NCBI GenBank assembly: GCA_965644295.1
Contig: CBFFRP010000080.1
Coordinates: forward strand, 248,001-312,000
Length of the DNA stretch: 64,000 bases
From: Paraphysomonas bandaiensis
Taxonomy: Eukaryota; Protista; Chrysophyceae
Reading direction: 5' to 3'
In this document: one piece after another, positions 8,040-52,166 of the stretch
How positions within the stretch are numbered: position 1 is the stretch's first letter
Layout of the letters: every line of letters begins with the position of its first letter
Made by a program: the position numbers and the translations under genes
Notes under the pieces: generated by a model
Seen by the model: the letters and a program-made list of their open reading frames with translations, nothing else
What the model was told of the DNA's origin: nothing
Databases searched by the model: none

Positions 8040-9020
8040 TAGTCAGAGGAAGAGCCATATATACGTTCGCACCGGTTGTCAAAGGGATAACTATCAGACT
8101 TGTGATTATTGCAATTGCTTTTATGTTTCACATGCATGTACACCAGCTCGATGTCAGCTCTGCATTTTGTTATGCGAACTTAGATGAAGACGTCTACATG
8201 TACCGACCTCCATATGACGAACTCAGCGATGGATGGTGCTTTAAACTCATCAAAGCGCTGTATGGTTACAATCCTCACCGCGCCAATGGAATTGCTACAT
8301 CCTCACACCGTTGCCATCGAATGCACAAGAATTACTAGCTGCAGAACGGGAACTTACATCAGAACGGGAGAGGACTGGGTCTCAAATTTTCCGTATCGTA
8401 GTATTATTGGAGCAATCCTGTATCTCGCACTTCATACAAGACCAGATCTTGCCTTTGCGATTGGACAACTATCGAGATACAGCAGTAAGCCTACGTGTAT
8501 GCATCTTGTCGGTTAGCAATTCATTTATTGAAATACTTGAGAGGAACGACGAATAAAGGGATCAAATTCAGTGGAACTAAATTCGATTTACATGTGTTCA
8601 GTGATGCGGACTCGGCAGGTGATATACTCACGAGACGTTCGACAACGGGATATATTGTATTCTTATGTGCAGGAGCTATTGCATGGCAGTTGTTACATCC
8701 AGCATGGAGTCCGAATATATGGCTGGGTATGCTGCAATGAAAGAATTGGTCTGGCTTCGGGGAGTGCTCCGGAACTAGGACTATCGCTAACGAAGCCAAC
8801 TCCATTCTTCATTTACAGCAAGAGCGCTAAAGATTTATCGGAAAATCCAGTGTATCATAAACGATCGAAACATATACAGATAAAGTATCACTGGGTACGG
8901 GAACACGTCAATGGTAAGTTCCCAACAGCCAGGCTAAACATTTTTCAACTAAAAACATGGCTGCTGACATTCGTTTTATCCTATAAGATGACTATGTGTG
9001 AAAGTCTGATTATTACATGA
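8040..9020 (+). mobile_element. Degenerate Copia RT + RNase H (second element, plus strand)
   Basis: TFAPVVKG..HQLDVSSAFCYANLDEDVYM, FPYRSIIGAILYLALHTRPDLAFAIGQLSRY, FSDADSAGDILTRRSTTGY, NPVYHKRSKHIQIKYHWVRE, spread over frameshifted ORFs. Confidence 0.92.
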
Positions 9021-13127: not shown

Positions 13128-13260
13128 ATGAGGCCAAACTTTGGTAATAATCTTATGAAGTGCGTTTACCGTCAATTTTCACGATCGCACTTGCGTTATT
13201 TTTCAATCTCGGCTCAATCAATCCAACCATTTCTCAATCCAACCAAGCGTAACTTACCAA
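13128..13260 (+). CDS. Predicted first coding exon of the PKS (mitochondrial-presequence-like peptide)
   Basis: ATG 13128 (or in-frame ATG 13155) reads MRPNFGNNLMKCVYRQFSRSHLRYFSISAQSIQPFLNPTKRNLP. A phase-1 donor GTGTGT at 13261 (alternative GTAACT at 13249) and an acceptor ...CTAACACGAAG at 13343 join in frame to S-I-Q-N-I-K-M(13361). Confidence 0.55.
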
Positions 13261-13360
13261 GTGTGTTAGGAGCAATCCTAATGACTTTCCACATTATTAT
13301 TTGTTTAAAGCAACAGAAAATAATAGAAGGGTCTAACACGAAGGTATTCAAAATATTAAA

Positions 13361-14210
13361 ATGTACGCGAGAGCAGCGACGCAAAGTGATGTGTATGATT
13401 TACTGGAACTTGAGAGGTGTTGTTGGGCAACACACCTTCAAGCCACTGAACAAACCATTCGAAACAGGATAACTCGCAACCCTTATGGCCAGTTCGTTGT
13501 TGTAATTAATGATACACTATGCGGTGCTCTGTATACACAAACCATTTTGAGTTCTAAAGAATTAGTTTCCGGAAAATTTGAGAACCAAGAAGATCTCCAC
13601 AACGAGAGAGGAACCACACTTCAACTGCTTGCTATTGCGGTGCAGAGTGTCAGCACAGGAAATCCTGCGGCGTTTTTACGTGATTATGCTCTTCAAGTAG
13701 CCAGAGATGATGCCAAAATCACAACTGTTGTTGCTATGACACGGTGCAGTGCGTACGCACAACAGAGTACAGGTGACTACAACAGATATGTGTTAAGCTG
13801 TAAGGATCCAACTATATTTTTCCATGTTTCTGGTGGTGCTACGATTGAGCAAATTGTTGAGAACTACCGTCCTGAAGATCGTGCTAATCTGGGCAGTGCA
13901 ATTTTGATACGTTATTCTTTGGATGCTTGCGTCAATGCGCCCACCTCTGGGGCATTTCCCGAGAAGTCTGAGGAATTTAGTGCTCCAATAGCGAGCACTC
14001 TTCTTGAAGATATCTGCAAGAAGCTTATCGAAATAAATCCACAGTGTGCATTTGTTAATGATCTTGGCGGAACTCCACTGATGACTGTAATCGACTCGCT
14101 CCAAGTTCTTGTTCTACACAGTTGGTTGGAGACAAGGTTGAGCCGTGACCTCTCACCAACATTTCTCTTTAATTATACCACACCGAAGAGCATTATTAAC
14201 GGCATATATG
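13361..14210 (+). other. PKS loading module: GNAT-like domain + ACP0
   Basis: VVAMTRC, DPTIFFHVSGGA and NYRPEDRANLGSAILIRY match CurA/SxtA-type GNAT-like initiation domains (conserved Thr and His). ACP: IDSL...LSPTFLFNYTTP. Confidence 0.88.
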
Positions 14211-17200
14211 GATCACCAGTTGCATCTGAAATATCGTACCAATCTTCTTCTGAGCCATTGGCAATTATTGGTACCTCATGCAAATTTCCTGGTGAAATAA
14301 ACTCTCTGCATGATATGTGGCGGAATATTGTCTCGAAAGCATGTGCCTCATCTGAAGTCCCATTTGATCGGTGGGACTTAAACGCTTTAGATTTAGAGAA
14401 ACATGGACTCGATCCCAGCCGTCAAAGTTGTGTAAATTTGGGATCTTTTTTGTCCTCAGTCGCACAATTCGATCCTACTTTTTTCGGTATGGGCCAAAGC
14501 GAGGCAGAAAACGTGGATCCACATCAGAGACTTGTTTTAGAAATGGCTGTTCGTGCACTTGCGGATAGTAATATGTCACGAGATAAGTTAGAAGGGCAGT
14601 GTGTGGGAGTATGGGTTGGTATGTCGGGTACTGATGTTAATTCGTTGCCTGGTTGTGGACTGAATGAAAATCACACCGTCTACTCTGCAACTGGATCGTC
14701 TGTTGCTGTGACAGCTGGGAGATTGTCATATCTCTTGGGATTACGTGGACCGGCCATGGTGGTTGATACGGCATGTTCCTCTTCACTAGTTGCACTAAAT
14801 CAGGCTTGTGAGGCTCTCCGAACGGGGAAGTGTAATGCTGCTGTCGTCTCTGCTGTAAATCTCATTTTGACACCATGGACATCTGTTGCGTATGCACGGG
14901 CAGGAATGACATCGCCGGATGGCAAGTGCCACACCTTTGATGAATCCGCCAACGGATACTGCAGAGCTGAAGGATGTGGTGCCTTAGTGTTGAAACGATT
15001 GAGTGATGCAGAACGAGATAATGATGGTATTTATGCAGTTGTTCGAGGGTCGGCAGTGATGCAGGACGGTAAGAGTGCTAGTTTGACAGCCCCCAATGGT
15101 CTTGCCCAGGAGCAGCTTCTTCGTGCGGCATTATCAGATGCTGGAGTGGATGCTGGTGATGTATCTCTTATTGAGGCTCATGGGACTGGGACGAAATTAG
15201 GTGATCCTATTGAGACGGAGGCTTTATCGTCGGTATATGGTCATGGGCGGAGTGAAGAGAATACATTGTATGTTTCGAGTGTAAAAGCGAATATCGGTCA
15301 TATGGAGGCAGCAGCTGGTATAGGAGGTATATTGTCAGCGATATTGGCACTTCATTATAAGCAAGCTCCTCCAAATGCCCAGCTGCGTGAGCTGAATTCG
15401 AAGGTGGCAGCATCTGTGTCAGGCAGTCCAATTTCGTTTCCCACGGAACCTACACCCTTGGTTCGACATGGGGATCGTCCTTTGTTAGCTGGAGTGAGTT
15501 CATTTGGTTATAGCGGCACAATATCTCATGTGATATTGGAAGAAGCTCCCCTCTCTCACTCCCGCTCGCCTGGTGTACTTTCTAGTAGCAAATCCTCCTC
15601 CACTGTATTGTCGGAAACATGTATAGCGGGTATGGTGTGGCAGTTTGCTGGACAGGGGACACTCAGTGTTGGCGCATTGCGCGATATGTATGAGTCGGAG
15701 TCCACATTTCGTGACGCTTTGAGTCGGTGTGATGATATTCTTCGATCTCATCTGGGTGTAGGTGCATCTGAGTTATTGTATCCTGGGATCTGTGGTAGTT
15801 TGACTGAGATTAGTGCAGCGGAGCACCTTTCGGAGACTGTGTACTCTCAGCCTATACTGGTGGCTCTTGAGTATTGTCTGAGTCAGGTATGGTTGTCACG
15901 GGGTATTCGCCCAGCTGCAGTGATGGGTCACAGTCTAGGAGAGTATGCAGCTGCTATTGTCAGCGGAGTTTTGTCATTGGAGGATAGTTTGCGACTGGTG
16001 TGTATACGTGGTCGCTTGATGCAGGAGAGTGATGGATGTGTGGGTTGCATGTATGCCGTCCGAGCAACAGCTGATGAGGTAATCAGTGCAATCTCTGATT
16101 CAGGTTTGACGAACGAAGTGTCTGTGGCTGCAGTGAATGGACTTCGTAGTGTAGTAGTATCCGGGTCTGTGGATGGAGTTCAGAAAGTGTTGAACAGCAC
16201 TGGTTTGATGAATATAAGCCATCGTCAGTTGAATGTATCGAGGGCATTTCACTCTCCGTTGATGGCAGATATTATTTCTGCTTATGAGAAGGAGCTGCTA
16301 TTAGTACAGTTTAATCATCCGACGGTTAAGTTTGTGTCTACTGTGACGGGACATTATGCGGATGAGGAGTTAATATCATCGTCATATTGGTTGAAGCATA
16401 TATTGCAGCCAGTGTTGTATGAGTCAGCAGTGGAGGTATGTTATAGTGGAGAGAGTCGTGATGGCACCTGTGTGTTTGTTGAGATGGGAGCGAATTCTAC
16501 ATTGAGCCGTTTAGTTCGAGTTAATCGTTTTAACATTGAATGTCTTAATGGGTTTGATATAATTGATATTTCAGCGAAGTACTGTTGGGGTTACCGACCT
16601 CGATATGTTCGTTATAAGCATCCGAATCACCGCGTTTTCCATGATAGCACTATATCTTTACGTGATAAAAGTATATGCTTCTACGGAAATATAACTGGTT
16701 TTCATATTAAAGAGGGTGCTAAATGTTTCCGGAGTTCTGGTGTTTTAGAAGCTGTAACCAGTGCCTTTATTTTGAACACTTTTTCGAAGTTGAACTCTGA
16801 TAATGTCTTCGTATCTTTAATTAATGTAAAGTTTACGCAGCATCGATTTCAGAAAGAGCGCGTTAGCACGGTTGTCTGCGAACTGAATACTTCATCTGAG
16901 TTTTTGCTCTATGCGGCGACTGATAACGATATGTACGAGATTTCAAGTGGCAGTGTTGGACTTAAGAAGCAGTTTGCTACACTCCCGTGTACGAGAGATC
17001 GTAATGGCCTTGACCTTAGCTTTCTCTCCCCATTGGAATTGCGAAGTTTTTCTGATGCTTTTGTCACGCTGAGTACGTTTGAATTTAACGAGGTTTCATT
17101 CCAGAGCACTTTTCGTAATGTTGCAGTTTCCGAAGAGCCAGGCTTCTCGCTTCATCCTGTTATATTCGAAGCAGCATTTCGAAGTTGCACAGCCCATATG

Positions 17201-20200
17201 ACAAAACTTAATATGCACGACGTATGGATATCATACTGTGAGGAAGTTGTGATCAATGGGAATCGCGATTTCCTTCCACTACAATGTAGTAAGTTTTATT
17301 GTCATGGAGTTGTCAAGTCAAGAACTTTGACTAGTGTTGTATATGATATCTTTGTGTGGAATTCACATGGAGATTTTCTCACAACTTTGAGAGGTTTAAC
17401 TGTAGTTCGTAGTGCCACAATTTCAGATCTGTTGTACCTGAACAGTTCCCTCGTTGAGTGTAAGTTTTTGCCTTTATCAAATGACTTAATTGGTATTAGT
17501 ACTCTTGGAATTTTTGGTTTTGAGGGCTTGAGTGTTGGCGTGAAAGAAATTTTAGAAACGGTATATTCGAGCGTGCATATTGAAATGCATGAATTAAGTG
17601 ATATTACGAACAAAACAGCATTGGATAGCTGTGATGCTTGTGTGATTCTACTCGACAAACTGTCCTGTGGAGATATTCGTCATTGTTTAAATATTTTGGA
17701 GGCCGCTTATATGACGTCTTCACCGCGGTTTCTATTTCTTACAGTCAACGCATTATGCAAAGAAATTGAGCCTTTTTCCTCTTTTTATGCTACATTTGCT
17801 GGTGCTGCTCGATGCGCACAATTGGAAAATCGTGAGGCCAAAATATCTGTTGTAGATATGTACTGTACTGGGCAAATTGTCGAAAGTGCAAGCAAAGTCA
17901 TTATAAACGAGCTGCCACTTCTTGGCTCCGAAATGGAGGTAGCATATTGCAACGATTTGCGTAATGTTAGGAGATATGCGCCACTCGATATATCAACTAC
18001 AGGATATATACGCCTATCATGCAGCGAGGATGTCGATCAAGGTACATATATTATTACAGGTGGGTTAGGTGGACTTGGACTATTGACTGCAAGGGTATTA
18101 GCTAGTCATGGTGCGTCTAGATTAGTACTTTTATCTCGATCTGGCAAGGTATCATATACCGGCCAGGGTCTGGAGTTGGAATTGGAGTGGCTTCGGGAGT
18201 CTTCTGGCAGTGAGGTTCATGTGATGTGTTGCGACGTATCTGACGAGTCTTCTGTAGTGGATATGTTGCGAGAGGTTCGTGAGATGGGTGGGGGTATTCG
18301 GGGAATCATTCATGCAGCAGGAGTACTTCGTGATGCGTTGATTCGTGGGGGTGGTGCGGCATCTGGTTGTGCTGATGTGTGGGCATCTAAGGCGCACAGT
18401 GCGTGGTTATTACACAAGCACACGTTGGAGGATTCCCTTTCAACATTTGTTGTATATTCGTCAATCGTATCCGCTATCGGAAATATTGGTCAATCTGCTT
18501 ATGGTGCCGCAAATAGTTATTTGGATGGACTTGTAGAGTATCGTGTTCGTAACGGTTTACCTGGTGTTAGTATTCGGTGGCCGGCGGTTACTGGAGTTGG
18601 TATGGCGGCAGCAACGGGTGTTGATGGCGTAGGTATTACAATTGGGTCATCATCCGTTGAGAATGTATTGAAATGTTTGGTGCTAAGTAATCGTGCCGTT
18701 GAGGGTGTTATCACTATAGCTCCCCATGGTATGAAGGATTGGATGTCTGACAGTATTAAACAACAGTTTTCAAATGTTAGATTGCTTCAACCAGTGCAGA
18801 CTAATACATCTATGGCCGTAACTGGGTCGTCAACTAGGCCCCGAATAAGATCTATTGTCTGTGAGCGGTCTATTGAGGATGTGGTGTATACCGTTCGTAG
18901 TATAGTAGAATCGTTACTAGAAGTCTCCGGCGTCTCCGAAACTGACCAAGTGATGGACATGGGACTGGATTCTCTAGCTGTCACTGAGTTAGCCAGTAAG
19001 TTAGCATCTGAGTTTGGGGTTCGTGTTCTTCCGACGTTGGTGTTTAATTATCCTACACTACGGGATATAACAGGACATATTATAGATCTCCTGGGACTGT
19101 CAGAGTCCATCACAACCACGGAATCACCTGGGTGTCTGCCTCCATATGAGGGAAGGGGAAACAGTGACATGGCCATCATTGGTGTAAGTTGTCGCCTTCC
19201 TGGTGATATTAATGATCTTGAGTCCATGTGGAGCATGTTATGTGGGCGCTGCGACATGACAAGCGAAGTATCACCGTATCGCTGGGACACAGATGGATTG
19301 ATGGCACGTAGTTCACTGGCGGATCCAAGTATATTAAACCGTGTTCGATATGGTGGTTTCTTGTCTGATGAAGTTTTGGAAAGCTTTGATGCATCGTTGT
19401 TTGGAATTTCTGACGCAGAGGCCATGCATATGGATCCTCGTCATAGATTGTTATTGGAAAGCAGTTACGAGGCTCTGGTGGATGCAGGGTATAATGTTTC
19501 TGAGCTGAAAGGAAAGAAAGTTGGGGTTTTCGTCGGGATATCTGGCTTACCAGATAATGACACATCTGATCATCGAAAATCTTTCTCTGTCTATGATGCT
19601 ACTGGAAAGGCGTTGTCCGTAGCAAGTGGAAGAATATCTTATGCATTTGGATTGCAAGGTCCTTGCTGGACCGTAGATACAGCTTGTTCGTCATCAATTG
19701 TGGCTATTCACTCTGCTAGAAGAAGTCTTCAGTTGAAGGAATGTGAGGTGGCAATTGTAGGAACCGCAACGGCACTGACATCTGAATTGAGTATTGCATG
19801 TGCTATGGCTGGCATGACATCGCCTGATGGCAAGTGCTACACCTTTGACGAGTCAGCCAACGGATACTGCAGAGCGGAAGGATGTGGTACCTTAGTGTTG
19901 AAACGATTGAGTGATGCAGAACGAGATAATGATGGTATTTATGCAGTTGTACGAGGGTCGGCAGTGATGCAGGACGGTAAGAGTGCTAGTTTGACAGCCC
20001 CCAATGGTCTTGCCCAGGAGCAGCTTCTTCGTGCGGCATTATCAGATGCCGGTGTGGATGCTGGTGATGTATCTCTTATTGAGGCTCATGGGACTGGGAC
20101 GAAACTAGGTGATCCTATTGAGACGGAGGCTTTATCGTCGGTATATGGTCATGGACGAAGTGAAGAGAATACATTGTATGTTTCTGGTGTAAAAGCGAAT

Positions 20201-23200
20201 ATCGGTCACATGGAGGCAGCAGCTGGTATAGGAGGTATATTGTCAGCGATATTGGCACTTCATTATAAGCAAGCTCCTCCAAATGCCCAGCTGCGTGAGC
20301 TGAACTCGAAGGTGGCAGCATCTGTGTCAGGCAGTCCAATTTCGTTTCCCACGGAACCTACTCCATTGGTTCGACATGGGGATCGTCCTTTGTTAGCTGG
20401 AGTGAGTTCATTTGGTTATAGCGGCACAATATCTCATGTGATATTGGAAGAAGCTCCCATCTCTCACTCCCGCTCGCCTGGTGTACTTTCTAGTAGCAAA
20501 TCCTCCTCCACTGTATTGTCGGAAACATGTATAGCGGGTATGGTGTGGCAATTTGCTGGACAGGGGACACTCAGTGTTGGCGCATTGCGCGATATGTATG
20601 AGTCGGAGTCCACATTTCGTGACGCTTTGAGTCGGTGTGATGATATTCTTCGATCTCATCTGGGTGTAGGTGCATCTGAGTTATTGTATCCTGGGATCTG
20701 TGGTAGTTTGACTGAGATTAGTGCAGCGGAGCACCTTTCGGAGACTGTGTACTCTCAGCCTATACTGGTGGCTCTTGAGTATTGTCTGAGTCAGGTATGG
20801 TTGTCACGGGGTATTCGCCCAGCTGCAGTGATGGGTCACAGTCTAGGAGAGTATGCAGCTGCTATTGTCAGCGGAGTTTTGTCATTGGAGGATAGTTTGC
20901 GACTGGTGTGTATACGTGGTCGCTTGATGCAGGAGAGTGATGGATGTGTGGGTTGCATGTATGCCGTCCGAGCAACAGCTGATGAGGTAATCAGTGCAAT
21001 CTCTGATTCAGGTTTGACGAACGAAGTGTCTGTGGCTGCAGTGAATGGACCTCGTAGTGTGGTAATATCCGGGTCTGTGGATGGAGTTCAGAAAGTGTTG
21101 AACAGCACTGGTTTGATGAATATGAGTCATCGTCAGTTGAATGTATCGAGGGCATTTCACTCTCCGTTGATGGCAGATATTATTTCTGCTTATGAGAAGG
21201 AGCTGCTATTAGTACAGTTTAATCATCCGACGGTTAAGTTTGTGTCTACTGTGACGGGACATTATGCGGATGAGGAGTTAATATCATCGTCATATTGGTT
21301 GAAGCATATATTGCAGCCAGTGTTGTATGAGTCAGCAGTGGAGGTATGTTATAGTGGAGAGAGTCGTGATGGCACCTGTGTGTTTGTTGAGATGGGAGCG
21401 GATTCTACATTGAGCCGTATTGGAGCATCTGCTATTCGTAAAGTTTTGGTGGATACATCTTGTTGTAGTTGGTTACACGGTATGAGTGTTGAGAACTTTT
21501 CAGCTTCTGGATTTAACAAGTTGTTTTCTCATAAACGGTTCCGGCTGAGGAAATTTTATCATCGTTTACTTGATTGTGCTGTTACTAGTTTGTTATCCAG
21601 TGCGACGGAGATGCACACTATCCTACACGGTGGGATCATAAATGAATGGTTAGGTCAACATGTGGTCCGTGGAGACATTGTGCTACCGGGTGCAGCAATG
21701 ATAGATATGGGCCTTGCTGTGGCATTGAGACAGCGTGTTGTTCATCAGAGCACTTATTCTGACGTGGTACTTCACTTGGAAGCGTTCAGTGTCACTCGAC
21801 CTCTCATTGTAGTTGACAGCAGTGCGTCTTCTACGTCCCCAACTGAGATGTGGTGTGTACATAGGGATGATAATAATATTCAGTGGCAAAGTTGTTTGGA
21901 TGGAAATAATGTAGAATTGAATGCTCAGTGTTCTGTAAATACTGTAAAAAATGGGGTACCAGTGGAGTGGCATGAATTAGAGAAGAAACTGATTGCACTA
22001 CGTGAAATTTGCAACCACGAACTCAACGTTTCTCAGCTGTACGCACGATTTGTTGACAGTGGTTTGTGTTATGGGCCTAAGTTTCAACTAGTAACGTCCT
22101 TGCATTGTGATACTGATGGGAAGAATGTTATCTCTCGATTGTCAATCGGGGATGTCAGTATGACTAGTTTATATTTGTTGCCGCCTCCATTTTTGGATGC
22201 CGTGCTACAGTCTGCTGTGGCAGCTAATATGTTTAGAGGTATCGAAGAGATGCAAGTACCATATGCCATCGACAATGTATGGTTGCGATGTGATGGATTA
22301 GCATCTCTGTGGGCAGCCGAGTGGTGTGAGGTCCATGTCGAGGCTCGCAGCATCACATCTGAGATGTCGATATTCGACCTGTATTTGTTTAGTGGGTCTG
22401 GTGAAGCTGTTTTAGTTGTAAATGGGTTGCGATGTGTTAGTTTTTCCGGAGGCTTGATGGATTCATGCAATTTGTTCTTGCATCGGTGGACTCCCTCAGT
22501 TTCTCCTTGCATTGATGGGGTTGCATTACATCATGTGTTGATTCTTGGTGACCCCGCTATGGGGAATATGTTGGGTCATGCACTGAATGAATATACCACT
22601 GTTGGTGCGATTGACATGGCTGCAAAAGATAATGTGAAGAACTATGACTTGGTTATTTTACAAGCTGGTGGTGATGCTGAACATGGCGATAGTGGTAGGA
22701 TGGTTACAAAACTTTTAGCCGAACTGGAATGGCTATGTACTCGCACATCTCGTGTTTTAATTTTATCTTATTCAAATGCATCAAGTACCCAAATTAATGC
22801 ATTTAGAAACACTGCTTGCACTTTGTCCGGTATAGTGAAATGTCTTCAATTGGAATGCCCTTTTCTGAAAATGTCTGTTGTAAACGTTGAACCTTATGTT
22901 GCGCTCTCTCAATCCAGTGAATCTGTCCACGAAAATGATACATCATTGTCTTATGCGCAAAGGGTGTTCTCTGCTTTGCAGAATGAGATATCTATAATGG
23001 ACGATGAGATGGAAGTTAAGTATCGTGATGGTGTGCGTATGATGAAGCGCTACGAGCCACTAGATTTACCTGCTATCAATACTGGTGACAATCGCAATGT
23101 GGAGGGAGGTACATTCATCATAACCGGTGGGTTAGGTGGACTTGGACTATTGACTGCAAGGGTATTAGCTAGTCATGGTGCGTCTAGATTAGTACTTTTA

Positions 23201-44200: not shown

Positions 44201-47200
44201 GTAAACTTCACTGTATTAAATAAAGAAGGGTCAGCTATATTGTGTGCTGAAGGCGTTGTTATGAGAAATATGGCAGAATTTAGTGGTGGTGCTCCAGACA
44301 ACACTTCCACAGCCATATTACAGAGCCAGTGGAAATTTTCTGGACCAGTTAATACTACGCCTTGCTCTATACCATCATGTTTGTTTGTTGGACCAGGTGA
44401 GACATGTACAGCAATTATAGATGTTCTAAATAGCAGCAATTTCACAATGGATATCGCTGACCATGTTAGCATCGGGCCCAATAACGTTTCTCTTATTATT
44501 CAAAACGACAAGAAGTACAATATGGCTGTTGTTGTTGTTGAAGGCATCGTTGCTTGTGATTCTATCGCAACGTCATACGACCCCATGAATGCTCTTCATT
44601 TAAAGGCTTGGCTTGAAGCTATTGAAATTTTGTGCGGAAGAACGAAGAATTTGATAGTTTTGTCTACGGTAGGAAATGAAGGCGATAACGTTTTGTACAA
44701 CACGCTAATTGGTGCAGTACGATGCGCTCAGTTAGAATATCCAGCAGTGCATATAGTGGTTATTGATATCGATTCATCGATTTCTGATGTGGAAGGCATG
44801 TGTGCTGCTTTGCAGAATGAGATATCTATAATGGATGGTGAGATGGAAGTTAAGTATCGTGATGGTGTGCGTATGGTGAAGCGCTACGAGCCATTAGATT
44901 TACCTGTTACCAATACTGGTGACAATCGCAATGTGGAGGGAGGTACATTCATCATAACCGGTGGGTTAGGTGGACTTGGACTATTGACTGCAAGGGTATT
45001 AGCTAGTCATGGTGCGTCTAGATTAGTACTTTTATCTCGATCTGGCAAGGTATCATATACCGGCCAGGGTCTGGAGTTGGAATTGGAGTGGCTTCGGGAA
45101 TCTTCTGGCAGTGAGGTTCATGTGATGTGTTGCGACGTATCTGACGAGTCTTCTGTAGTGGATATGTTGCGAGAGGTTCGTGAGATGGGTGGGGGTATTC
45201 GGGGAATCATTCATGCAGCAGGAGTACTTCGTGATGCGTTGATTCGTGGGGGTGGTGCGGCATCTGGTTGTGCTGATGTGTGGGCATCTAAGGCGCACAG
45301 TGCGTGGTTATTACACAAGCACACGTTGGAGGATACGCTTACAACATTTGTTGTATATTCATCGATTGCATCTGCTTTTGGTACTGTTGGGCAGGCCTCG
45401 TATTCGATGGCCAATGGATATCTGGATGATTTAATTTGTTTTCGAAGGCGTCATGGAATGTGTGGTGTTAGTATTCGGTGGCCGCCTGTGTCCTCTGTTG
45501 GTATGGCTGTACACGTTGGTGTGGCAACGGATGAAGCAAGTATTGATGCCGAGTATTTGCAAACGTTTGTTAGGAAGGTTCTTGATTCGAATTGTTCTCT
45601 TTCTGTTGTGACCTTATTGCCACATGGTCTTTTAGACTGGGTTGGGGAAGATCTGCGTACTCAACTTGAAGGAGTCAGCCAACCACAAGTGGTTACTAAG
45701 AAATCAGCAGCTCGAAACCCGAGCTCCAACCAAGGTATTACGAAAGAAGATGTTTTGAAAAAAGTGAGAAGCATTGTAATACAATTGGTGGAAAATTCTG
45801 ACGCCACCGACAGCAGCCAGCTCATGGACTACGGTTTAGATTCACTTGGAGTGACTGAACTTTCAACTCAATTAGCCAGTCAATTTCAAATTAAATTGCC
45901 TCCAACCTTGGTATTTAGCTATCCAACTATTGATGATATCACTGGCCACATTCTTGAATTGCTTGGTGTTTCCGACGTAAAGGAAGAGCCAGAACGTGGA
46001 CTGACCAGGACATCGAACTCTCGATTTGACAGTGGCGATATGGCTATAGTTGGTGTAAGTTGTCGATTACCTGGCGATGTGAATGATTTGAATTCAATGT
46101 GGGAAATGCTCAGTGGAGGTCGTGATGCGACAAGCGTGGTGTCTCCATCTCGCTGGGATGTGGATGCATTAATTGCACGCAGTGATTTGATGGATCCGAG
46201 TGTGTTGGATCGTGTTCGTCACGGCGGTTTTTTGTCAGATGATGTTTTGGAGGGTTTTGATGCACCTTTATTTGGAATTTCTGATGCAGAAGCCTCCCAT
46301 ATGGACCCTACCCACCGTTTGTTATTACAATGTGCCTACGAGGCCTTATGTGATGCAGGGTACGATATGTCGACAATGAAAGGTCAGAAGATTGGGGTAT
46401 TTGTGGGGGTATCTGGTTCTGTGTTCCGAGATAGCAATGGAAGTACATCCTGTGCGGTACACTCAAAACCCTCAGTGTATGATGCCACAGGATCGACTCT
46501 ATCTGTCGCAGCTGGTCGAATATCATATGTTTTGGCCTTGCAAGGTCCATGTGTTGCATTCGACACCGCTTGCTCATCTTCTCTAGTAGCATTGCACTAT
46601 GCCAAGCGAAGTATGCAGCACAGAGAGTGCGATGTGGTAATAGTTATGGGAGTCAATTTCTTGACAAAGCATTCGTCTCTGGCGTGTGCTATGGCTGGCA
46701 TGACATCGCCTGATGGCAAGTGCCACACCTTTGACGAGTCAGCCAACGGGTACTGTAGAGCTGAAGGATGTGGTGCCTTAGTGTTGAAGCGATTGAGTGA
46801 TGCTGAACGAGATAATGATGGTATTTATGCAGTTGTACGAGGGTCAGCAGTGATGCAGGACGGTAAGAGTGCTAGTTTGACAGCCCCCAATGGTCTTGCC
46901 CAGGAGCAGCTTCTTCGTGCGGCATTATCAGATGCTGGAGTGGATGCTGGTGATGTATCTCTTATTGAGGCTCACGGGACTGGGACGAAACTAGGTGATC
47001 CTATTGAGACGGAGGCTTTATCGTCGGTATATGGTCATGGGCGAAGTGAAGAGAATACATTGTATGTTTCTGGTGTAAAAGCGAATATCGGTCACATGGA
47101 GGCAGCAGCTGGTATAGGAGGTATATTGTCAGCGATATTGGCACTTCATTATAAGCAAGCTCCTCCGAATGCCCAGCTGCGTGAGCTGAACTCGAAGGTG

Positions 47201-50200
47201 GCAGCATCTGTGTCAGGCAGTCCAATTTCGTTTCCCACGGAACCTACTCCATTGGTTCGACATGGGGATCGTCCTTTGTTAGCTGGAGTGAGTTCATTTG
47301 GTTACAGCGGCACAATATCTCATGTGATATTGGAAGAAGCTCCCATCTCTCACTCCCGCTCGCCTGGTGTACTTTCTAGTAGCAAATCCTCCTCCACTGT
47401 ATTGTCGGAAACATGTATAGCGGGTATGGTGTGGCAATTTGCTGGACAGGGGACACTCAGTGTTGGCGCATTGCGCGATATGTATGAGTCGGAATCTACG
47501 TTTCGTGACGCTTTGAGTCGGTGTGATGATATTCTTCGATCTCATCTGGGTGTAGGTGCATCTGAGTTATTGTATCCTGGGATCTGTGGTAGTTTGACTG
47601 AGATTAGTGCAGCGGAGCACCTTTCGGAGACTGTGTACTCTCAGCCTATACTAGTGGCTCTTGAGTATTGTCTGAGTCAGGTGTGGTTGTCACGGGGTAT
47701 TCGCCCAGCTGCAGTGATGGGTCACAGTCTAGGAGAGTATGCAGCTGCTATTGTCAGCGGAGTTTTGTCATTGGAGGATAGTTTGCGACTGGTGTGTATA
47801 CGTGGTCGCTTGATGCAGGAGAGTGATGGATGTGTGGGTTGCATGTATGCCGTCCGAGCAACAGCTGATGAGGTAATCAGTGCAATCTCTGATTCAGGTT
47901 TGACGAACGAAGTGTCTGTGGCTGCAGTGAATGGACCTCGTAGTGTGGTAATATCCGGGTCTGTGGATGGAGTTCAGAAAGTGTTGAACAGCACTGGTTT
48001 GATGAATATGAGTCATCGTCAGTTGAATGTATCGAGGGCATTTCACTCTCCGTTGATGGCAGATATTATTTCTGCTTATGAGAAGGAGCTGTTATTAGTA
48101 CAGTTTAATCATCCGACGGTTAAGTTTGTGTCTACTGTGACAGGACATTATGCGGATGAGGAGTTAATATCATCGTCATATTGGTTGAAGCATATATTGC
48201 AGCCAGTGTTGTATGAGTCAGCAGTGGAGGTATGTTATAGTGGAGAGAGTCGTGATGGCACCTGTGTGTTTGTTGAGATGGGAGCGGATTCTACATTGAG
48301 CCGAATGGGTCAAAATATCTCTCGAAGTTCTAAAGTCCAGTGGAAATCTGGGAATGAGCCTTTTGGTTGTACTTCTGAAGAGAGTTTGATGACTGCATTC
48401 AATGTTTGTAAGAAGTCGAAGATGTATTGCAGTTATGAACGAAGCCATGCGCTCTTACAAGATACCAAAATTGATCCAATATCTGGGGATATTGTATATA
48501 CCATAGCATTACATGAGGGTATACTTTCGAGTTGGCTATCGGATCACGTATTGCATGATGCTATTGTTTTGCCTGGAGCTGCCATTGTTGAAATAATGAG
48601 TTCTGCCCTGATGTTTTGCAGCGACAACAAGCATACTGATGTCATTTCCCTAGAAGGAGTCACTGTGGTGCGCCCTGTGGTTGTGAGTAACACTAGAGAC
48701 GCTACTGGAAGGCTAAACGCAACCACACTTTGGTGTGTATGTAGCAAAGAGAATGGAATCGTCAGCATGAATTTATTCAGTATGGAAAGTGGCACTCGAG
48801 TGCTGCATGCACGGGGAACTGCTGAAACAGCAGGAAAAGGTCAACCTTTACCGCTTCAGAAGGTGCTGTTGGCGTTTGATACTTTAAAGTCGCAGTGCTC
48901 TGTTGAAATTGATGTTAACCGTGCCTACAACAATATTTCGAAGGAAGGTTTGAAATTCGGACCGAGCTTCAAAATTTTACAAAGAGCACATATTTCCAAA
49001 GACATGTCGAGTGCAATTGCTGTGTTAAATATATCGAATATATCTCTTTCTAACTACCTGCTTCCACCACCAATTATTGACGCCATGCTGCAAACAGGAT
49101 TTACTTTGTCCGTTGTTGGCAGTCATGATGAAAACAGCGAGGACACGGCACGTATTCCGTATTCTTTCGATCATGTGTGGATACTGCATGATGTTATCAA
49201 GGAAACGCGTGGTACTAGTACTTGTTTTGCCTATGTTCAAACAGTCAAAACTGATAGAAGTACAAGTATATGTAATTATGCCCTTGTTAACGAGAACGGG
49301 CACGTAATGCTGTATGCCGAAGGCGTTTATTGTAGACGTTCGAACTCCAATATTCAGCAAGGAAACGAAACGAGTTCAGTGCTACAGTATAAGTGGACTA
49401 AATCACCTGATATTTTATTGGATACGGTGGTTGATTTGGGAGGTGAAAAAAAGCTACTGCTAGTGGGAAGTGAAAGAATTTTTTCCGTATTGATGGAAAA
49501 GGAGTGGTGGAGTGGCCATGACAACACTTTCGTGGAATTATCTTCCCTCTTGCAAGAGCCTGGGAGTATTGGTAGTGCTTCATATGACAAGATATTTGTT
49601 GTAGGCGATGAGTGTTGGCCTGATACCGAATATTTCTGTCAAACTCCTATGTCTGATTGGATAAAAGTCATTGAGGTGTTGTATGGGAAAGCAGAAACAA
49701 TTTTCTTTATTTTCTCGAATACTTCAGCAGCATACAGCTCTATTCTAGGCTCAATTCGATGCGCCCAGTTGGAATATTCCGGAACGAGATCTTCTTTCAT
49801 TGTAACTGATCCATCCATACCTTATGAGCGGAGCTTGTGCTCTGCTTTGCAGAATGAGATATCTATAATGGATGGTGAGATGGAAGTTAAGTATCGTGAT
49901 GGAGTGCGTATGGTGAAGCGCTACGAGCCATTAGATTTACCTGTTACCAATACTGGTGACAATCGTAATGTGGAGGGAGGTACATTCATCATAACCGGTG
50001 GGTTAGGTGGACTTGGACTATTGACTGCAAGGGTATTAGCTAGTCATGGTGCGTCTAGATTAGTACTTTTATCTCGATCTGGCAAGGTATCATATACCGG
50101 CCAGGGTCTGGAGTTGGAATTGGAGTGGCTTCGGGAATCTTCTGGCAGTGAGGTTCATGTGATGTGTTGCGACGTATCTGACGAGTCTTCTGTAGTGGAT

Positions 50201-52166
50201 ATGTTGCGAGAGGTTCGTGAGATGGGTGGGGGTATTCGGGGAATCATTCATGCAGCAGGAGTACTTCGTGATGCGTTGATTCGTGGGGGTGGTGCGGCAT
50301 CTGGTTGTGCTGATGTGTGGGCATCTAAGGCGCACAGTGCGTGGTTATTACATAAGCACACGTTGGAGGATACGCTTACAACATTTGTTGTATATTCATC
50401 GATTGCATCCGCTATCGGAAATATTGGTCAATCTGCTTATGGTGCCGCAAATAGTTATTTGGATGGACTTGTAGAGTATCGTGTTCGTAACGGTTTACCT
50501 GGTGTTAGTATTCGGTGGCCGGCGGTAACTGGAGTTGGTATGGCGGCAGCAACGGGTGCGGACATTGCTCATTTTTCGGTAGACTTACGTTTTGTTAAGA
50601 AAATTTTGGAAAACGTTTTCAACAGTCCTTTTTGTTGCTCTGGTGTTGTGACGTTGATGCCACACTCAGTATGTTGTGCACTGGATGAACCTCTGCGGAA
50701 AGAATTTTCTGAGATTGGAATTGGGTCACGAGGAGTTTCGACCGTACCCCATGATATTTCTCCTGGGTCCTTGAATATCCATAGGTGTCCTTCGAATATG
50801 TCTGATATTACCTCCAAAGTTCGCGATTTAGTTTTATCTCTTATGGGAACTGATGACATCTCCGATGATGCTGAACTGTTGGACTTTGGGTTGGATTCGT
50901 TTGGAACAATGGAAGTATCAACCCTTCTATCTTCGGAGTTTGGCGTTCGACTTCTACCGACATTAGTTTTTACTTGTCCAACAATCAAAAAAATATCTTA
51001 TTACATATCAGAGCTCATAGGGGGTGTTGAAAACGACAACGTTGATGACATATCATCGCAACCAAACAATTCAAGACCAAGCCTTTATGCGAACCATGTC
51101 AGCGGGAAGCCGCTCGCAAGTAATTCAAGATTTTCTTGCTTCTTTAGTCCATCTTCACCAGAGTAAGCTCAACTATAATGCCGATGCGACTTATTTAATT
51201 TAGTATTCGTCATACAGTTATCGTATTGTTATATTTTCTGCAGCCGGACAGATTCCATTGGCATGGCATTATTTTGCGACATGTCTGGCCCAGCGTGGGT
51301 GTGATGTGTATGTTGTACATTTACCAGGTGCGTTTTGGATGCGTTTTGGACTTATGGTGGTAGTTTATGGCTGATGTTTTTTCAGGGCGGTTTGATAGAA
51401 TGGATGAAACTCCATTTCAGAATTTTGAGAAACTAGTAGAAGGATTGTCCGAGGTATATATTCCACTTTGTATATTTCACTGTAAATGTTTTCGTGTGTA
51501 GAGTATGAAAACATCTGGCTTCCTGAACGATATTCCCCTCGCTTTCATCGGCTACTCCTTCGGTACTTATTTAGCATACGACTGCGCTCGTTACCTTTAT
51601 GACGTCTACGGTTACAAAATCGAACATATCGTGTCGATTGCTGGAATACCAGTGTGCGATCTATTGAATTTTAATGGAATTTCGGACATGCCTGGAGAAA
51701 ATGATATCGAAAAGCTTAGAAATTTGTTTCTGACAAACCATGGACACGTTCCAGACGCCTTTAACTCTAGTTCTGCGAAAGATATTGCAGGGCCGATTTT
51801 AGAAGGTTATTACTTTGAACAGTATCAAGTATTTTTTAACAATTAGACTAGATTTCAAGCTCTCTGATGAATGGACGGAAAGTATGCTGAAGCGGGAAGC
51901 AAGTGATGATGGGGGGCCGTTGGAATGTAACTTTACGTGGATACTGGGATCTGATGATCCTAGTATCGGAAAAAACTCGACCTGGGAGGTATAACCATTG
52001 ATTTTTGTCTTATGTTGTTTAGATTTTGTTGTAGACCACTGTATCTGGCGTTTACCAAAAAATTGTATACCGTGGCGATCACTTTTTTATATTCAGTAGC
52101 GATACTGTTGATAAAGATATTGCAGAAGAATGCATCAATTGTATTACGCGTTGCAAACGTGTTTAG
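13361..52166 (+). CDS. Giant modular type I polyketide synthase: GNAT-ACP, 8 extension modules, TE (~12,850 aa from ATG 13361; exons 13361-51162, 51218-51327, 51386-51453, 51502-51805, 51852-51988, 52035-52166)
   Basis: 12,601-aa ORF with 8 KS (DTACSS, EAHGTGT, NIGH), 6 AT (GHSLG, RAFHS), 8 DH-like folds, 7 KR (TGGLGGLG, YxxAN) and 9 ACP (DSL/DSF). The stop at 51164-66 overlaps donor GTAAGC. Five GT-AG introns restore a continuous frame ending TAG at 52164-66. Confidence 0.97.
14252..19095 (+). other. PKS module 1: KS-AT-DH(degenerate)-KR-ACP
   Basis: KS C-H-H intact; AT GHSLG/RAFHS. DH region has HIKEGAKCFR (no Pro) and HPVIFEAAF (Asp to Glu). KR LRD / YGAAN; ACP GLDSL. Confidence 0.88.
19163..24162 (+). 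other. PKS module 2: KS-AT-DH-KR-ACP
   Basis: DH with intact HVVRGDIVLP and DAVLQ; other catalytic motifs intact. Confidence 0.92.
24230..29214 (+). other. PKS module 3: KS-AT-DH-KR-ACP
   Basis: Near-copy of module 2 at a 5067-bp offset. Differs in the KS active-site segment and the KR structural subdomain. Confidence 0.92.
29282..33228 (+). other. PKS module 4: KS-DH(inactive)-KR-ACP, no AT
   Basis: HVILEEPG is followed within ~30 aa by YHPLL (DH start). No GHSxG. DH lacks His and has FIEAMF. Confidence 0.9.
33296..38277 (+). other. PKS module 5: KS-AT-DH(inactive)-KR-ACP
   Basis: DH motif DYKQGDNVVVP (His to Tyr) and FIEAMF (Asp to Glu). Confidence 0.9.
38345..41905 (+). other. PKS module 6: KS-AT-DH(inactive)-ACP, no KR
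   Basis: Copy of module 5 at a 5049-bp offset up to ~41390, then runs directly into ACP (LGLDSL) with no TGGLGGLG. Confidence 0.9.
41972..45965 (+). other. PKS module 7: KS-DH(inactive)-KR-ACP, no AT
   Basis: HVILEERV with no AT following. DH DYELGSEMVLP (His to Tyr). KR has a divergent catalytic loop, SAFGTVGQASYSMAN. Confidence 0.9.
46034..51020 (+). other. PKS module 8: KS-AT-DH-KR-ACP
   Basis: DH with HVLHDAIVLP and DAMLQ (both catalytic residues present); ACP FGLDSF. Confidence 0.9.
51163..52034 (+). other. Five short spliceosomal introns: 51163-51217, 51328-51385, 51454-51501, 51806-51851, 51989-52034
   Basis: All GT...AG, 46-58 nt. Phases 2,1,0,1,0 are mutually consistent and join TE motifs (e.g. 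LP-G-RFDR across the second intron). Confidence 0.85.
51218..52166 (+). other. PKS C-terminal thioesterase, encoded on five small exons
   Basis: Spliced translation: YRIVIFSAAGQIPLAW...VVHLPGRFDRMDETPF...FIGYSFG...ILGSDDP...YRGDHFF. Contains GxSxG and GxHFF, GrsT/TEII-like. Confidence 0.9.

What the first reader, a model, noticed from the sequence alone, without database searches (positions are those of the whole stretch)
13128..52166. Self-contained ~12,900-aa, 8-module assembly-line PKS in a eukaryotic (protist-like) genome
Seen: one gene encodes loading (GNAT-ACP), eight extension modules and a release TE, with every KS triad and ACP serine intact and no stop in 37.8 kb, while neighbouring elements are decayed. 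Established: eukaryotic multimodular PKSs are known mainly from haptophytes, chlorophytes, dinoflagellates and apicomplexans, and the algal ones (e.g. Prymnesium PKZILLAs) are largely trans-AT. Inference: a start-to-finish, mostly cis-AT, ER-free single polypeptide of ~1.4 MDa is a complete pathway to an unassigned natural product, probably in a lineage with little described polyketide chemistry. No PPTase or tailoring gene is visible in the window.
Basis: partly seen in the sequence, partly recalled or inferred. Interest (0 to 1): 0.93.

Follow-up and report, generated by a model that had tools for sequence, protein, structure and literature searches.

The report
Giant eight-module protist polyketide synthase
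A colourless marine flagellate related to golden algae carries a real, transcribed 12,850-residue gene for an assembly-line enzyme that probably builds an 18-carbon polyketide of unknown role; such giant enzymes are known in other protists, so this is a well-documented new member and not a new kind.

Summary
Window 13361-51162 is one uninterrupted exon. RNA contigs from three runs splice it through five GT..AG introns to five small thioesterase exons, ending at the stop at 52164-52166. The product has 12,850 aa: GNAT-ACP loading, eight KS modules and a TE. All eight KS Cys-His-His triads and all nine ACP serines are intact. Six modules have near-identical malonyl-type ATs, two have none, and there is no ER.

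New points:
- DH4 to DH7 lack both catalytic motifs.
- The modules are a mosaic: 95-100% identical from the KS C-half through the AT and in the KR core, but divergent in the KS N-half, DH and ACP.
- Two more giant PKS genes lie just upstream on the same contig.
- An orphan 5,052-bp contig equals one module period, so the count of eight could be off by one.
- The start at 13128 is unsupported. The ATG at 13361 matches the paralogue and a chrysophyte homologue.

The host has no light-harvesting genes, and its HSP90 is nearest to ochrophyte algae. The closest loading modules are chrysophyte (Epipyxis 45%, Mallomonas 43%). No close or characterised orthologue was found. Multi-domain PKS transcripts in chrysophytes were already reported in 2016.

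Verdict: new member of a known kind, moderate interest. The scan had already noted the GNAT, the TE and the sister-gene TE separately.

The parts
13361..51162 (+). Exon 1 of the PKS gene: 37,802 nt without intron or stop, encoding aa 1-12600 (GNAT-ACP loading plus modules 1-8).
   Evidence: ORF list. Splice donor at 51162|GT seen in RNA contigs. Start ATG is conserved with paralogue A and with Epipyxis P0368.
13361..13960 (+). GNAT-fold decarboxylase-type loading domain (aa 1-~200), with no N-terminal adaptor region.
   Evidence: PDB sequence search: SxtA 7UCL E 5.5e-32, CurA 2REE 8e-23, GphF 6MFC 1e-22. The TRC threonine and FHVSGGA histidine align. Pfam finds nothing.
13973..14230 (+). Loading ACP (aa 205-290) with an IDSL serine and a small insertion.
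   Evidence: Pfam PP-binding E 3.6e-4. Alignment. 98.8% identical to the loading ACP of paralogue A. The same unusual motif occurs in Epipyxis.
14252..19168 (+). Module 1: KS-AT-[510 aa with no recognisable family; its C-terminal part resembles the KR structural subdomain]-KR-ACP.
   Evidence: The gap region has no Pfam or PDB hit and only weak internal similarity.
19169..24235 (+). Module 2: KS-AT-DH(active motifs)-KR-ACP.
24236..29287 (+). Module 3: KS-AT-DH(active motifs)-KR-ACP. It forms a 4.4-kb DNA repeat with module 2 at 98.5% identity.
29288..33301 (+). Module 4: KS-(no AT)-DH*(His->Glu, DxxxQ lost)-KR-ACP.
33302..38350 (+). Module 5: KS-AT-DH*(His->Tyr)-KR-ACP. KS5 is 100% identical to KS6.
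   Evidence: Orphan contig C595 is a circular permutation of this unit.
38351..41977 (+). Module 6: KS-AT-DH*(dead)-ACP, with no KR.
41978..46039 (+). Module 7: KS-(no AT)-DH*(dead)-KR-ACP. Its KR is 88% identical to the others.
46040..51162 (+). Module 8: KS-AT-DH(His and DxxxQ kept)-KR-ACP.
   Evidence: RNA contigs cover this stretch.
51163..51217 (+). Intron 1 (55 nt, GT..AG). It removes the in-frame stop that ends the mega-ORF.
   Evidence: Joint 51162>51218 in X11 (polyA metatranscriptome), X8 and X14. The DNA run X1 is unspliced.
51218..51327 (+). Exon 2: start of the thioesterase (IVIFSAAGQ...LPG).
51328..51385 (+). Intron 2 (58 nt).
51386..51453 (+). Exon 3 of the gene (TE).
51454..51501 (+). 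Intron 3 (48 nt).
51502..51805 (+). Exon 4: TE core with the nucleophile motif GYSFG.
   Evidence: Pfam PF00975 Thioesterase E 3.6e-5, 24.5 bits, which is below the 26.4 cut-off when this exon is scored alone..
51806..51851 (+). Intron 4 (46 nt). It is absent at the matching place in sister gene B.
51852..51988 (+). Exon 5: TE part with the GSDDP aspartate.
51989..52034 (+). Intron 5 (46 nt).
52035..52166 (+). Exon 6: TE end with the GDHFF histidine, and the stop codon at 52164-52166.
   Evidence: RNA coverage stops in the 52119-52315 bin.

Best explanation
This is a functional, transcribed nuclear gene of a colourless ochrophyte-type stramenopile, most likely of chrysophyte affinity. It encodes one 12,850-aa (about 1.4 MDa) collinear type I polyketide synthase.

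Shown:
- The architecture is GNAT-ACP | KS-AT-x-KR-ACP | 2 x KS-AT-DH-KR-ACP | KS-DH*-KR-ACP | KS-AT-DH*-KR-ACP | KS-AT-DH*-ACP | KS-DH*-KR-ACP | KS-AT-DH-KR-ACP | TE.
- The catalytic motifs are intact in the KS, AT, KR, ACP and TE domains and in the GNAT.
- The TE exons are spliced onto the mega-exon.
- Differences between strains are mostly synonymous.

Inferred mechanism:
- A PPTase encoded elsewhere activates the nine ACPs.
- The loading ACP receives malonate, probably from a neighbouring AT. The CurA/GphF/SxtA-type GNAT decarboxylates it to an acetyl starter.
- Eight malonyl extensions follow. The ATs carry GHSLG and RAFH motifs. The two AT-less modules are served by adjacent identical ATs or by a free malonyl transferase.
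- The KRs are B-type (LRD motif). Only DH2, DH3 and DH8 can dehydrate.
- The predicted chain is therefore a C18 acid with 17-OH, 14-ene, 12-ene, 11-OH, 9-OH, 7-oxo, 5-OH and 2-ene.
- The fused type II-like TE (Ser-Asp-His) releases it by hydrolysis or lactonisation.

Evolution: the gene grew by in-frame tandem duplication of modules. It is kept mosaic by gene conversion within the gene and with its two neighbouring paralogues.
For: - ORF and its improbability by chance.
- Domain order.
- KS triads. AT, DH, KR and ACP motifs.
- GNAT homology with aligned Thr and His.
- Five introns removed in a polyA marine metatranscriptome and in two culture RNA-type runs, but not in the DNA run. Spliced frame open to 52166.
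- 17 synonymous against 12 non-synonymous strain differences. This is rough, because some positions lie in repeats.
- Collinear GNAT-ACP-KS-AT homologue in Epipyxis, 45% over 1,100 aa starting at residue 1-2, and one in Mallomonas.
- Host placement: no LHC genes. HSP90 is an MMETSP transcript nearest to Ectocarpus (86%) and Ochromonas (85%).
- PPTase candidates on C199 and C360.
- Mosaic identity profile and DNA repeats of 98.5-99.8%.
- KS N-half tree clusters the extension KSs by gene.
Against: - RNA evidence covers only the last ~5.5 kb (46.8-52.3 kb). A full-length 38.9-kb mRNA and the protein have not been seen.
- Module number is not secure. Repeats of 3.2-4.4 kb are 98.5-99.4% identical, and orphan contig C595 equals one module period.
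- The TE rests on a sub-threshold Pfam hit for one exon, on motifs in the spliced reading and on the paralogue. The PDB search of that exon alone was not significant.
- The product structure assumes strict collinearity, active KRs, no module skipping or iteration, and loading in trans for two modules. None of this was tested.
- How the loading ACP gets its malonate is unknown.
- The 510-aa region in module 1 is unassigned.
Confidence: 0.8

Rival explanations
1. The gene is real, but the eight-module structure is partly an assembly product. Near-identical module-length repeats were collapsed, expanded or mis-ordered. The true gene, or one haplotype, has a different number of modules, for example a second copy of the module-5 unit giving nine modules and a C20 product.
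For: - DNA repeats of 4.4 kb at 98.5% and 3.2 kb at 99.4% identity. KS5 and KS6 are identical.
- Orphan contig C595 is 5,052 bp, exactly one in-frame module period. It is a circular permutation of window 33137-37833 plus 32782-33136, with only 1-3 mismatches.
- The KS tree shows that modules multiply within each gene, so copy number is labile.
Against: - The repeats are not identical (17-58 differences), which long accurate reads can resolve.
- The assembled gene is collinear and in frame from GNAT to TE.
- C595 can equally be a leftover cycle of the assembly graph.
Confidence: 0.25
2. The enzyme does not make a secreted toxin-like secondary metabolite. It makes a structural or storage lipid, for example a polyhydroxy acid for a cyst or cell covering, as proposed for the giant PKSs of Chlamydomonas zygospores and apicomplexan oocysts. 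This rival concerns biological role only. The enzymology is the same.
For: - The family is conserved across chrysophytes and synurophytes at 43-52% identity in the loading module, which suggests an old, retained function.
- The gene is expressed in ordinary cultures and in seawater polyA RNA.
- There are no tailoring genes nearby.
- The analogy with Chlamydomonas and apicomplexans comes from my own knowledge.
Against: - Three rapidly diversifying paralogues with labile module numbers look more like evolving secondary metabolism than a conserved structural pathway.
- No direct evidence either way.
Confidence: 0.3
3. The gene is a recently inactivated relic, or a bacterial contaminant or recent transfer that is not used by the host.
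For: - The long exon has no introns.
- The best giant database hits are bacterial at 35-48% identity.
- GC3 is 0.37 against 0.64 in HSP90.
- Four of seven DH domains are dead.
Against: - There is no stop in 12,601 codons.
- Five spliceosomal introns are removed in polyA RNA.
- The contig is 456 kb and carries host genes, including an HSP90-family gene.
- Collinear homologues occur in other chrysophytes.
- Strain differences show a synonymous excess.
- Overall GC matches the flanks.
Confidence: 0.03

Closest known systems
CurA / GphF / SxtA GNAT-type loading modules of bacterial PKSs (curacin, gephyronic acid, saxitoxin)
   Same: - Homologous GNAT fold (E 5.5e-32 to 1e-22).
- The catalytic Thr and His align.
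- The GNAT is followed directly by an ACP and then by a KS.
- The expected chemistry is decarboxylation of malonyl-ACP to an acetyl starter (established knowledge for CurA and GphF).
   Different: - There is no N-terminal adaptor or methyltransferase region. The GNAT begins at residue 1-4, whereas in the bacterial relatives it starts near residue 500.
- Identity to the bacterial ones is only 31-36%, against 43-52% to a eukaryotic (chrysophyte) group.
- The host is eukaryotic.
Chrysophyte/synurophyte GNAT-ACP-KS-AT proteins (Epipyxis sp. PR26KG P0368 and P0367, Mallomonas annulata P0365; EukProt transcript models)
   Same: - Collinear GNAT-ACP-KS-AT from the first residue.
- 45% identity over 1,100 aa.
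- The same peculiar loading ACP motif.
- KS1 groups with Epipyxis KS1 in the tree.
   Different: - The relatives are known only as partial transcript models (381-1,540 aa) with no described function.
- Identity is too low for orthology of the whole assembly line.
- Their module number and release domain are unknown.
Giant modular type I PKSs of other protists (Cryptosporidium CpPKS1, about 13,400 aa; Toxoplasma PKSs; Chlamydomonas PKS1; Ostreococcus and Emiliania PKSs; Prymnesium PKZILLAs). This comparison rests on my own knowledge.
   Same: - Single nuclear genes encoding many collinear KS modules in one polypeptide of megadalton size.
- The product is mostly unknown.
   Different: - CpPKS1 starts with an acyl ligase and ends with a reductase. 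This gene has a GNAT start and a TE end.
- The PKZILLAs are far larger, trans-AT and rich in introns. This gene is 6/8 cis-AT, with one 37.8-kb exon plus five micro-exons.
- No sequence-level orthologue was seen among proteins of 1,060-3,377 or 5,500-17,500 aa.
Mycolactone PKS (MLSA1/2, MLSB) of Mycobacterium ulcerans and other highly homogenised bacterial assembly lines. This comparison rests on my own knowledge.
   Same: Domains of the same type are nearly identical between modules and between separate genes of the locus. This implies recent duplication plus gene conversion.
   Different: - This one is eukaryotic and nuclear.
- Homogenisation is mosaic. It spares the KS N-terminal half (including the region around the active-site cysteine), the DH and half of the ACP, rather than covering whole domains.
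Type II (editing) thioesterases such as RifR, and TEII/SrfTE-like alpha/beta hydrolases
   Same: Size and motif pattern match: an N-terminal motif like FxxAGG, then GxSxG, GxDD, and His in GDHF. Pfam PF00975 hits the core exon.
   Different: - It is fused in cis to the last ACP and split by five introns.
- Significance is weak when exons are searched singly.
- The sister gene B has the same fused arrangement at only 29% identity.

Membership tests
Modular (assembly-line) type I PKS, cis-AT type | Several KS domains in one polypeptide, each followed by its own ACP in repeated module order | tested here: met
   8 KS and 9 ACP domains lie in collinear modules.
Modular (assembly-line) type I PKS, cis-AT type | KS catalytic Cys-His-His | tested here: met
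   DTACSSS, EAHGTGT and KANIGH are present in all eight KS.
Modular (assembly-line) type I PKS, cis-AT type | An AT domain with GHSxG serine and the xAFH histidine inside each module | tested here: inconclusive
   Six modules carry near-identical ATs with GHSLGE and RAFHS. Modules 4 and 7 have no AT. The system is therefore mixed.
Modular (assembly-line) type I PKS, cis-AT type | ACP phosphopantetheine serine (DSL) | tested here: met
   All nine ACPs have it.
Modular (assembly-line) type I PKS, cis-AT type | Collinear, non-iterative use of modules | not testable with these tools
   This needs product chemistry or in vitro reconstitution.
GNAT-type (CurA/GphF/SxtA) decarboxylating loading module | Sequence homology to the GNAT-fold decarboxylase domain | tested here: met
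   7UCL E 5.5e-32, 2REE 8e-23, 6MFC 1.2e-22 over query residues 4-194.
GNAT-type (CurA/GphF/SxtA) decarboxylating loading module | Catalytic Thr and His of the decarboxylase site | tested here: met
   MTRC and FHVSGGA align with the TRC and FHVSGGA of SxtA. The residue roles come from the published CurA/GphF work (my own knowledge).
GNAT-type (CurA/GphF/SxtA) decarboxylating loading module | N-terminal adaptor region (or MT) before the GNAT | tested here: not met
   The GNAT starts at residue ~4 of the protein. In the bacterial relatives it starts near residue 500. There is an in-frame stop 24 nt upstream of the ATG.
GNAT-type (CurA/GphF/SxtA) decarboxylating loading module | Malonyl-ACP decarboxylase activity | not testable with these tools
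   Needs an enzyme assay.
trans-AT PKS | Modules generally lack AT, and a free-standing AT is encoded with the system | tested here: not met
   Six of eight modules have a cis AT. Outside the FAS and PKS genes the genome shows only a weak AT hit, in a 339-aa open frame on C218.
Apicomplexan CpPKS1-type megasynthase | Acyl-ligase loading unit and terminal reductase | tested here: not met
   No AMP-binding or terminal reductase family was hit. The gene has a GNAT start and a TE end instead.
Thioesterase (PF00975, alpha/beta hydrolase) release domain | Profile match over the curated cut-off | tested here: inconclusive
The core exon alone scores 24.5 bits against a cut-off of 26.4, E 3.6e-5.
Thioesterase (PF00975, alpha/beta hydrolase) release domain | Ser-Asp-His triad in the usual order | tested here: met
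   GYSFG, GSDDP and GDHFF occur in the spliced reading. The same motifs occur in sister gene B.

The most novel reading that the evidence does not exclude
The 105-kb locus holds three megasynthase genes: this one, and an out-of-order split pair A and B upstream. It may be a eukaryotic example of a rapidly evolving assembly-line 'module factory'. In-frame tandem duplication changes module number between genes, and perhaps between haplotypes. Gene conversion keeps the KS C-half, AT and KR scaffolds 95-100% identical, while the KS N-half, DH and ACP are left free to diverge. On this reading a bacterivorous colourless flagellate makes a small family of related C18-C20 polyol-enone polyketides, possibly lactones, for predation or defence. 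That chemistry is undescribed in this lineage.
Probability: 0.25. Interest if true: 0.7.

Novelty: new member of a known kind. Interest (0 to 1): 0.5.

Why it matters
- It gives a complete gene model, with RNA support at the 3' end, for a giant modular PKS in a heterotrophic golden-alga relative. In this group PKSs were known only as transcript fragments, and I know of no assigned assembly-line product.
- The architecture allows a concrete product prediction (acetate plus eight malonates, three double bonds, four hydroxyls, one ketone). Metabolomics or labelling can test it.
- The locus is a clean natural case of module duplication and mosaic gene conversion in a eukaryote. This is useful for understanding how assembly lines evolve and for engineering.
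- The transcript is seen in seawater polyA RNA, so the product may matter in microbial food webs.

Tried and rejected
- Pfam on the first 300 aa found no GNAT family. The PDB sequence search settled the GNAT instead.
- The 510-aa gap of module 1 has no Pfam or PDB match. Only its C-terminal part resembles the KR structural region of other modules. It stays unassigned.
- The PDB search of the TE core exon alone was not significant.
- The ESM Atlas feature search of loading plus module 1 gave only generic bacterial PKS clusters without taxa. On the 480-aa upstream ORF it gave only hypothetical or RNase H-like clusters.
- The look-up of encoding contigs on a flanking ORF returned nothing.
- A thraustochytrid host was considered and rejected: there is no FabA-type PUFA-synthase domain in the genome. 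An algal (photosynthetic) host was rejected: there are no LHC genes.
- The hidden first exon at 13128 was considered. There is no conservation upstream between this gene and paralogue A. The homologues start at the same Met. I could not test it with reads, because the single read-laying run was used on the 3' end.
- Two searches for giant or module-sized homologues found no near relative. The best were 48% partial (P0121) and 35-45% in bacterial giants.
- Literature searches found no characterised orthologue. The supplement of Kohli et al. is not held.
- Species naming was not pursued beyond phylum-level placement, since records of this genome are withheld by the tools.
- The joined (spliced) TE protein was not sent to any search tool. 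Exons were searched singly by reference. The joined reading was used only in local scripts, to check the frame and to compare with the paralogues.
Full report
**1. Is it there?**

The window (G000:C80:248001-312000) holds one ORF of 12,601 codons at 13361-51166 on the + strand. The other five frames of the same stretch carry 386-1037 stops. From base composition, the chance of no stop is about 1e-330.

Pfam finds KS, AT, DH, KR and ACP families many times over and no ER family. A self-BLAST with one copy of each domain places these in collinear order:
- 8 KS, at aa 298, 1937, 3626, 5310, 6648, 8331, 9540 and 10894
- 6 AT
- 7 DH-like domains
- 7 KR
- 9 ACP

All eight KS keep DTACSSS, HGTGT and NIGH. 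All nine ACPs keep the DS(L/F) serine.

**2. The two ends**

N-terminus. Pfam misses the first domain. The PDB sequence search matches residues 4-194 to the GNAT-fold decarboxylases of SxtA (7UCL, E 5.5e-32), CurA (2REE, 8e-23) and GphF (6MFC, 1.2e-22), and the TRC threonine and FHVSGGA histidine align.

Start codon. An in-frame stop lies 24 nt upstream of the ATG at 13361. The paralogue on the same contig and the Epipyxis homologue both begin at this same methionine. Nothing upstream is conserved between the paralogues. It is not excluded by reads, because none were laid there.

C-terminus. Contigs from a polyA marine metatranscriptome (X11) and two culture RNA-type runs (X8, X14) skip five GT..AG introns: 51163-51217, 51328-51385, 51454-51501, 51806-51851 and 51989-52034. 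A DNA run (X1) is unspliced.

The added 250 aa read as a type II-like thioesterase with GYSFG, GSDDP and GDHFF. The core exon alone hits Pfam Thioesterase at E 3.6e-5, just under the cut-off.

I did not send the joined protein to any search tool. It was used only in local scripts.

**3. Anatomy and predicted chemistry**

| Unit | Domains |
|---|---|
| Loading | GNAT-ACP |
| M1 | KS-AT-x-KR-ACP |
| M2, M3 | KS-AT-DH-KR-ACP |
| M4 | KS-DH*-KR-ACP |
| M5 | KS-AT-DH*-KR-ACP |
| M6 | KS-AT-DH*-ACP |
| M7 | KS-DH*-KR-ACP |
| M8 | KS-AT-DH-KR-ACP |
| Release | TE |

- The six ATs are virtually identical. They carry GHSLGE and RAFHS, the malonyl pattern.
- The KRs carry the NADPH loop, the K/S/Y/N set and an LRD (B-type) motif.
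- DH2, DH3 and DH8 keep the HxxxG/DxxxxP histidine and DxxxQ.
- DH4 to DH7 have His replaced by Glu or Tyr, and DxxxQ replaced by ExxxL. They are catalytically dead.
- The 'x' in M1 is a 510-aa stretch with no recognisable family.

With strict collinearity (an inference), acetate plus eight malonates give a C18 acid with 17-OH, 14-ene, 12-ene, 11-OH, 9-OH, 7-oxo, 5-OH and 2-ene. Release would be by hydrolysis or lactonisation.

The two AT-less modules and the loading ACP must be charged by neighbouring ATs or by a free transferase. PPTase candidates exist on contigs C199 and C360, not in the window.

**4. Mosaic repeats and the assembly caveat**

Across the eight modules, identity is as follows:

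| Segment | Identity between modules |
|---|---|
| KS C-terminal half through the AT | 95-100% |
| KR core | 99-100% |
| DH and KR structural part | 26-55% |
| KS N-half, around the active-site cysteine | 49-74% |
| ACP | 34-67% |

At the DNA level there are repeats of 4.4 kb (98.5%), 3.2 kb (99.4%) and 1.6 kb (99.75%). KS5 and KS6 are identical.

An orphan contig, C595, is 5,052 bp, which is one in-frame module period. It is a circular permutation of window 33137-37833 plus 32782-33136, with 1-3 mismatches. It is either a leftover cycle of the assembly graph or a sign of an extra copy of the module-5 unit. Eight modules is the assembled number, and nine is possible.

**5. Surroundings**

The same contig holds two more giant PKS ORFs on the minus strand, just upstream of the window.
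- Gene A (C80:194294-216169, 7,292 aa) runs GNAT-ACP, four modules, then KS and a truncated AT. It has no TE.
- Gene B (C80:225233-247273, 7,347 aa) begins mid-module with DH*-KR-ACP, has four more modules, and ends with its own TE in small exons.
- A and B are complementary halves, but they lie in the order B then A.
- ACP0 and KS1 of A are 99-100% identical to those of this gene, while the GNAT is 76% and the module-1 gap is 29% identical. This points to gene conversion between paralogues.

A tree of the variable KS N-halves groups KS1 of A and of this gene with Epipyxis KS1. It clusters all extension KSs by gene. Modules therefore multiplied, or were homogenised, within each gene.

In the window itself, the flanks show a Copia RT fragment (7994-8338), an unassigned 480-aa ORF and a flavohaemoglobin gene (55051-56214, minus strand). 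There is no tailoring enzyme.

**6. Host and relatives**

- The genome is 62.5 Mb in 669 contigs. It has no LHC genes and no FabA-type domain.
- Its single-exon HSP90 is an MMETSP transcript. The nearest named relatives are Ectocarpus (86%) and Ochromonas (85%), with unnamed metagenome proteins at up to 92%.
- An exhaustive profile-free search with GNAT-ACP found 48 cluster representatives (one per 50%-identity cluster) at E <= 1e-30. The best (43-52%) all start with the GNAT at residue 1-5. They include Epipyxis sp. and Mallomonas annulata. The bacterial CurA-like proteins follow at 31-36%, with the GNAT near residue 500.
- Epipyxis P0368 is collinear GNAT-ACP-KS-AT at 45% over 1,100 aa.
- The host is thus a colourless ochrophyte, most likely of chrysophyte affinity. 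This is an inference. A paper names a JGI genome of the colourless chrysophyte Paraphysomonas imperforata, but I did not establish the species.
- Searches for giant (5,500-17,500 aa) and module-sized (1,060-3,377 aa) homologues found nothing above 48% identity.

**7. Is it used?**

- Sampled 31-letter words of the 3' 6 kb are held by runs of 13 studies, including polyA marine metatranscriptomes.
- The spliced form is present in three RNA-type runs.
- Of 29 listed strain differences, 17 are synonymous and 12 are not. This suggests purifying selection. It is rough, because part of the stretch is repeated.
- Only the last ~5.5 kb were examined. A full-length transcript and the protein remain unshown.

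**8. Comparison and novelty**

It works like a bacterial cis-AT assembly line primed by a CurA/GphF-type GNAT. It lacks the adaptor region of those loading modules and has two AT-less modules.

It differs from the apicomplexan CpPKS1 type (ligase start, reductase end) and from the trans-AT, intron-rich PKZILLAs. Those comparisons rest on my own knowledge.

Its homogenised domains recall the mycolactone PKS, but here the homogenisation is mosaic.

Kohli et al. 2016 (PMC5029157) already reported multi-domain type I PKS transcripts in chrysophytes, synurophytes, dictyochophytes and pelagophytes. No paper I could find describes this gene, its architecture or a product.

I therefore rate it a new member of a known kind. 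Three features are worth following up: the module mosaic, the three-gene locus with an out-of-order split pair, and the micro-exon TE on a 37.8-kb exon.

**9. Earlier scan notes**

The scan had separately noted the GNAT start, the intron-dense TE, the proposed hidden first exon and the sister gene's TE. I tested the first two and they hold. I tested the third in part, and it is not supported. The fourth I checked in part.

Noticed in passing
G000:C80:194294-216169 (L001-L003) and C80:224400-247273 (L004-L006), minus strand, upstream of the window: Two more giant PKS ORFs. Gene A (7,292 aa) runs GNAT-ACP, four modules, then KS and an internally deleted AT, with no TE. Gene B (7,347 aa) starts mid-module with DH*-KR-ACP, has four more modules (three KS-AT-DH*-KR-ACP, then KS-AT-DH*-ACP), and ends with a TE in small exons. 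They are complementary halves encoded in the order B then A. This is either a two-subunit synthase with a split module, or a rearranged copy.
   Followed up: partly
G000:C595:1-5052 (L010): An orphan contig of exactly one in-frame module period (1,684 codons, open throughout). It is a circular permutation of window 33137-37833 plus 32782-33136, with 1-3 mismatches. It is either an assembly leftover or evidence for an extra module-5 copy.
   Followed up: partly
window 30.6-31.5 kb, 35.7-36.5 kb, 40.8-41.6 kb, 43.6-44.3 kb (DH4-DH7): Four of the seven DH-like domains have lost both the catalytic His (to Glu or Tyr) and the DxxxQ motif (to ExxxL). They are still kept as full-length domains, and their C-terminal halves are shared almost identically between modules.
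   Followed up: yes
window 16511-18040 (aa 1052-1560, module 1): A 510-aa stretch between AT1 and KR1 has no Pfam or PDB match. It is only 29% identical to the matching stretch of paralogue A, although the flanking KS1 and AT1 are 95-100% identical between the two genes.
   Followed up: partly
window 55051-56214, minus strand: A flavohaemoglobin-like gene (globin plus FAD-binding domain of a ferredoxin-reductase type) lies 3 kb downstream of the PKS, apparently with one short intron. There is no evident link to the PKS.
   Followed up: no
window 7994-8338 (+) and 9165-10607 (-): A Copia-type reverse transcriptase fragment and a 480-aa ORF without a family (Atlas: hypothetical or RNase H-like clusters) lie in the 14-kb spacer between the divergently oriented genes B and C.
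   Followed up: partly
C80:224440-225201 (L004) compared with window 51218-52166: The TE of sister gene B is only 29% identical to this TE, although the AT domains of the two genes are about 95% identical (KR 80-86%, KS about 70%). B shares the first three intron positions but lacks intron 4. The TE fusion and most of its introns are therefore older than the homogenised parts suggest.
   Followed up: partly
whole genome G000: No light-harvesting (PF00504) and no FabA (PF07977) matches were found anywhere. The organism is colourless and lacks a PUFA-synthase-type dehydratase. Two PPTase candidates lie on C199 and C360.
   Followed up: partly
window 13361-51162: The coding strand has a strong and uniform G-over-C skew (+0.15 to +0.25) and T-over-A skew along the whole exon. 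GC3 is only 0.37, against 0.64 in the host HSP90.
   Followed up: no
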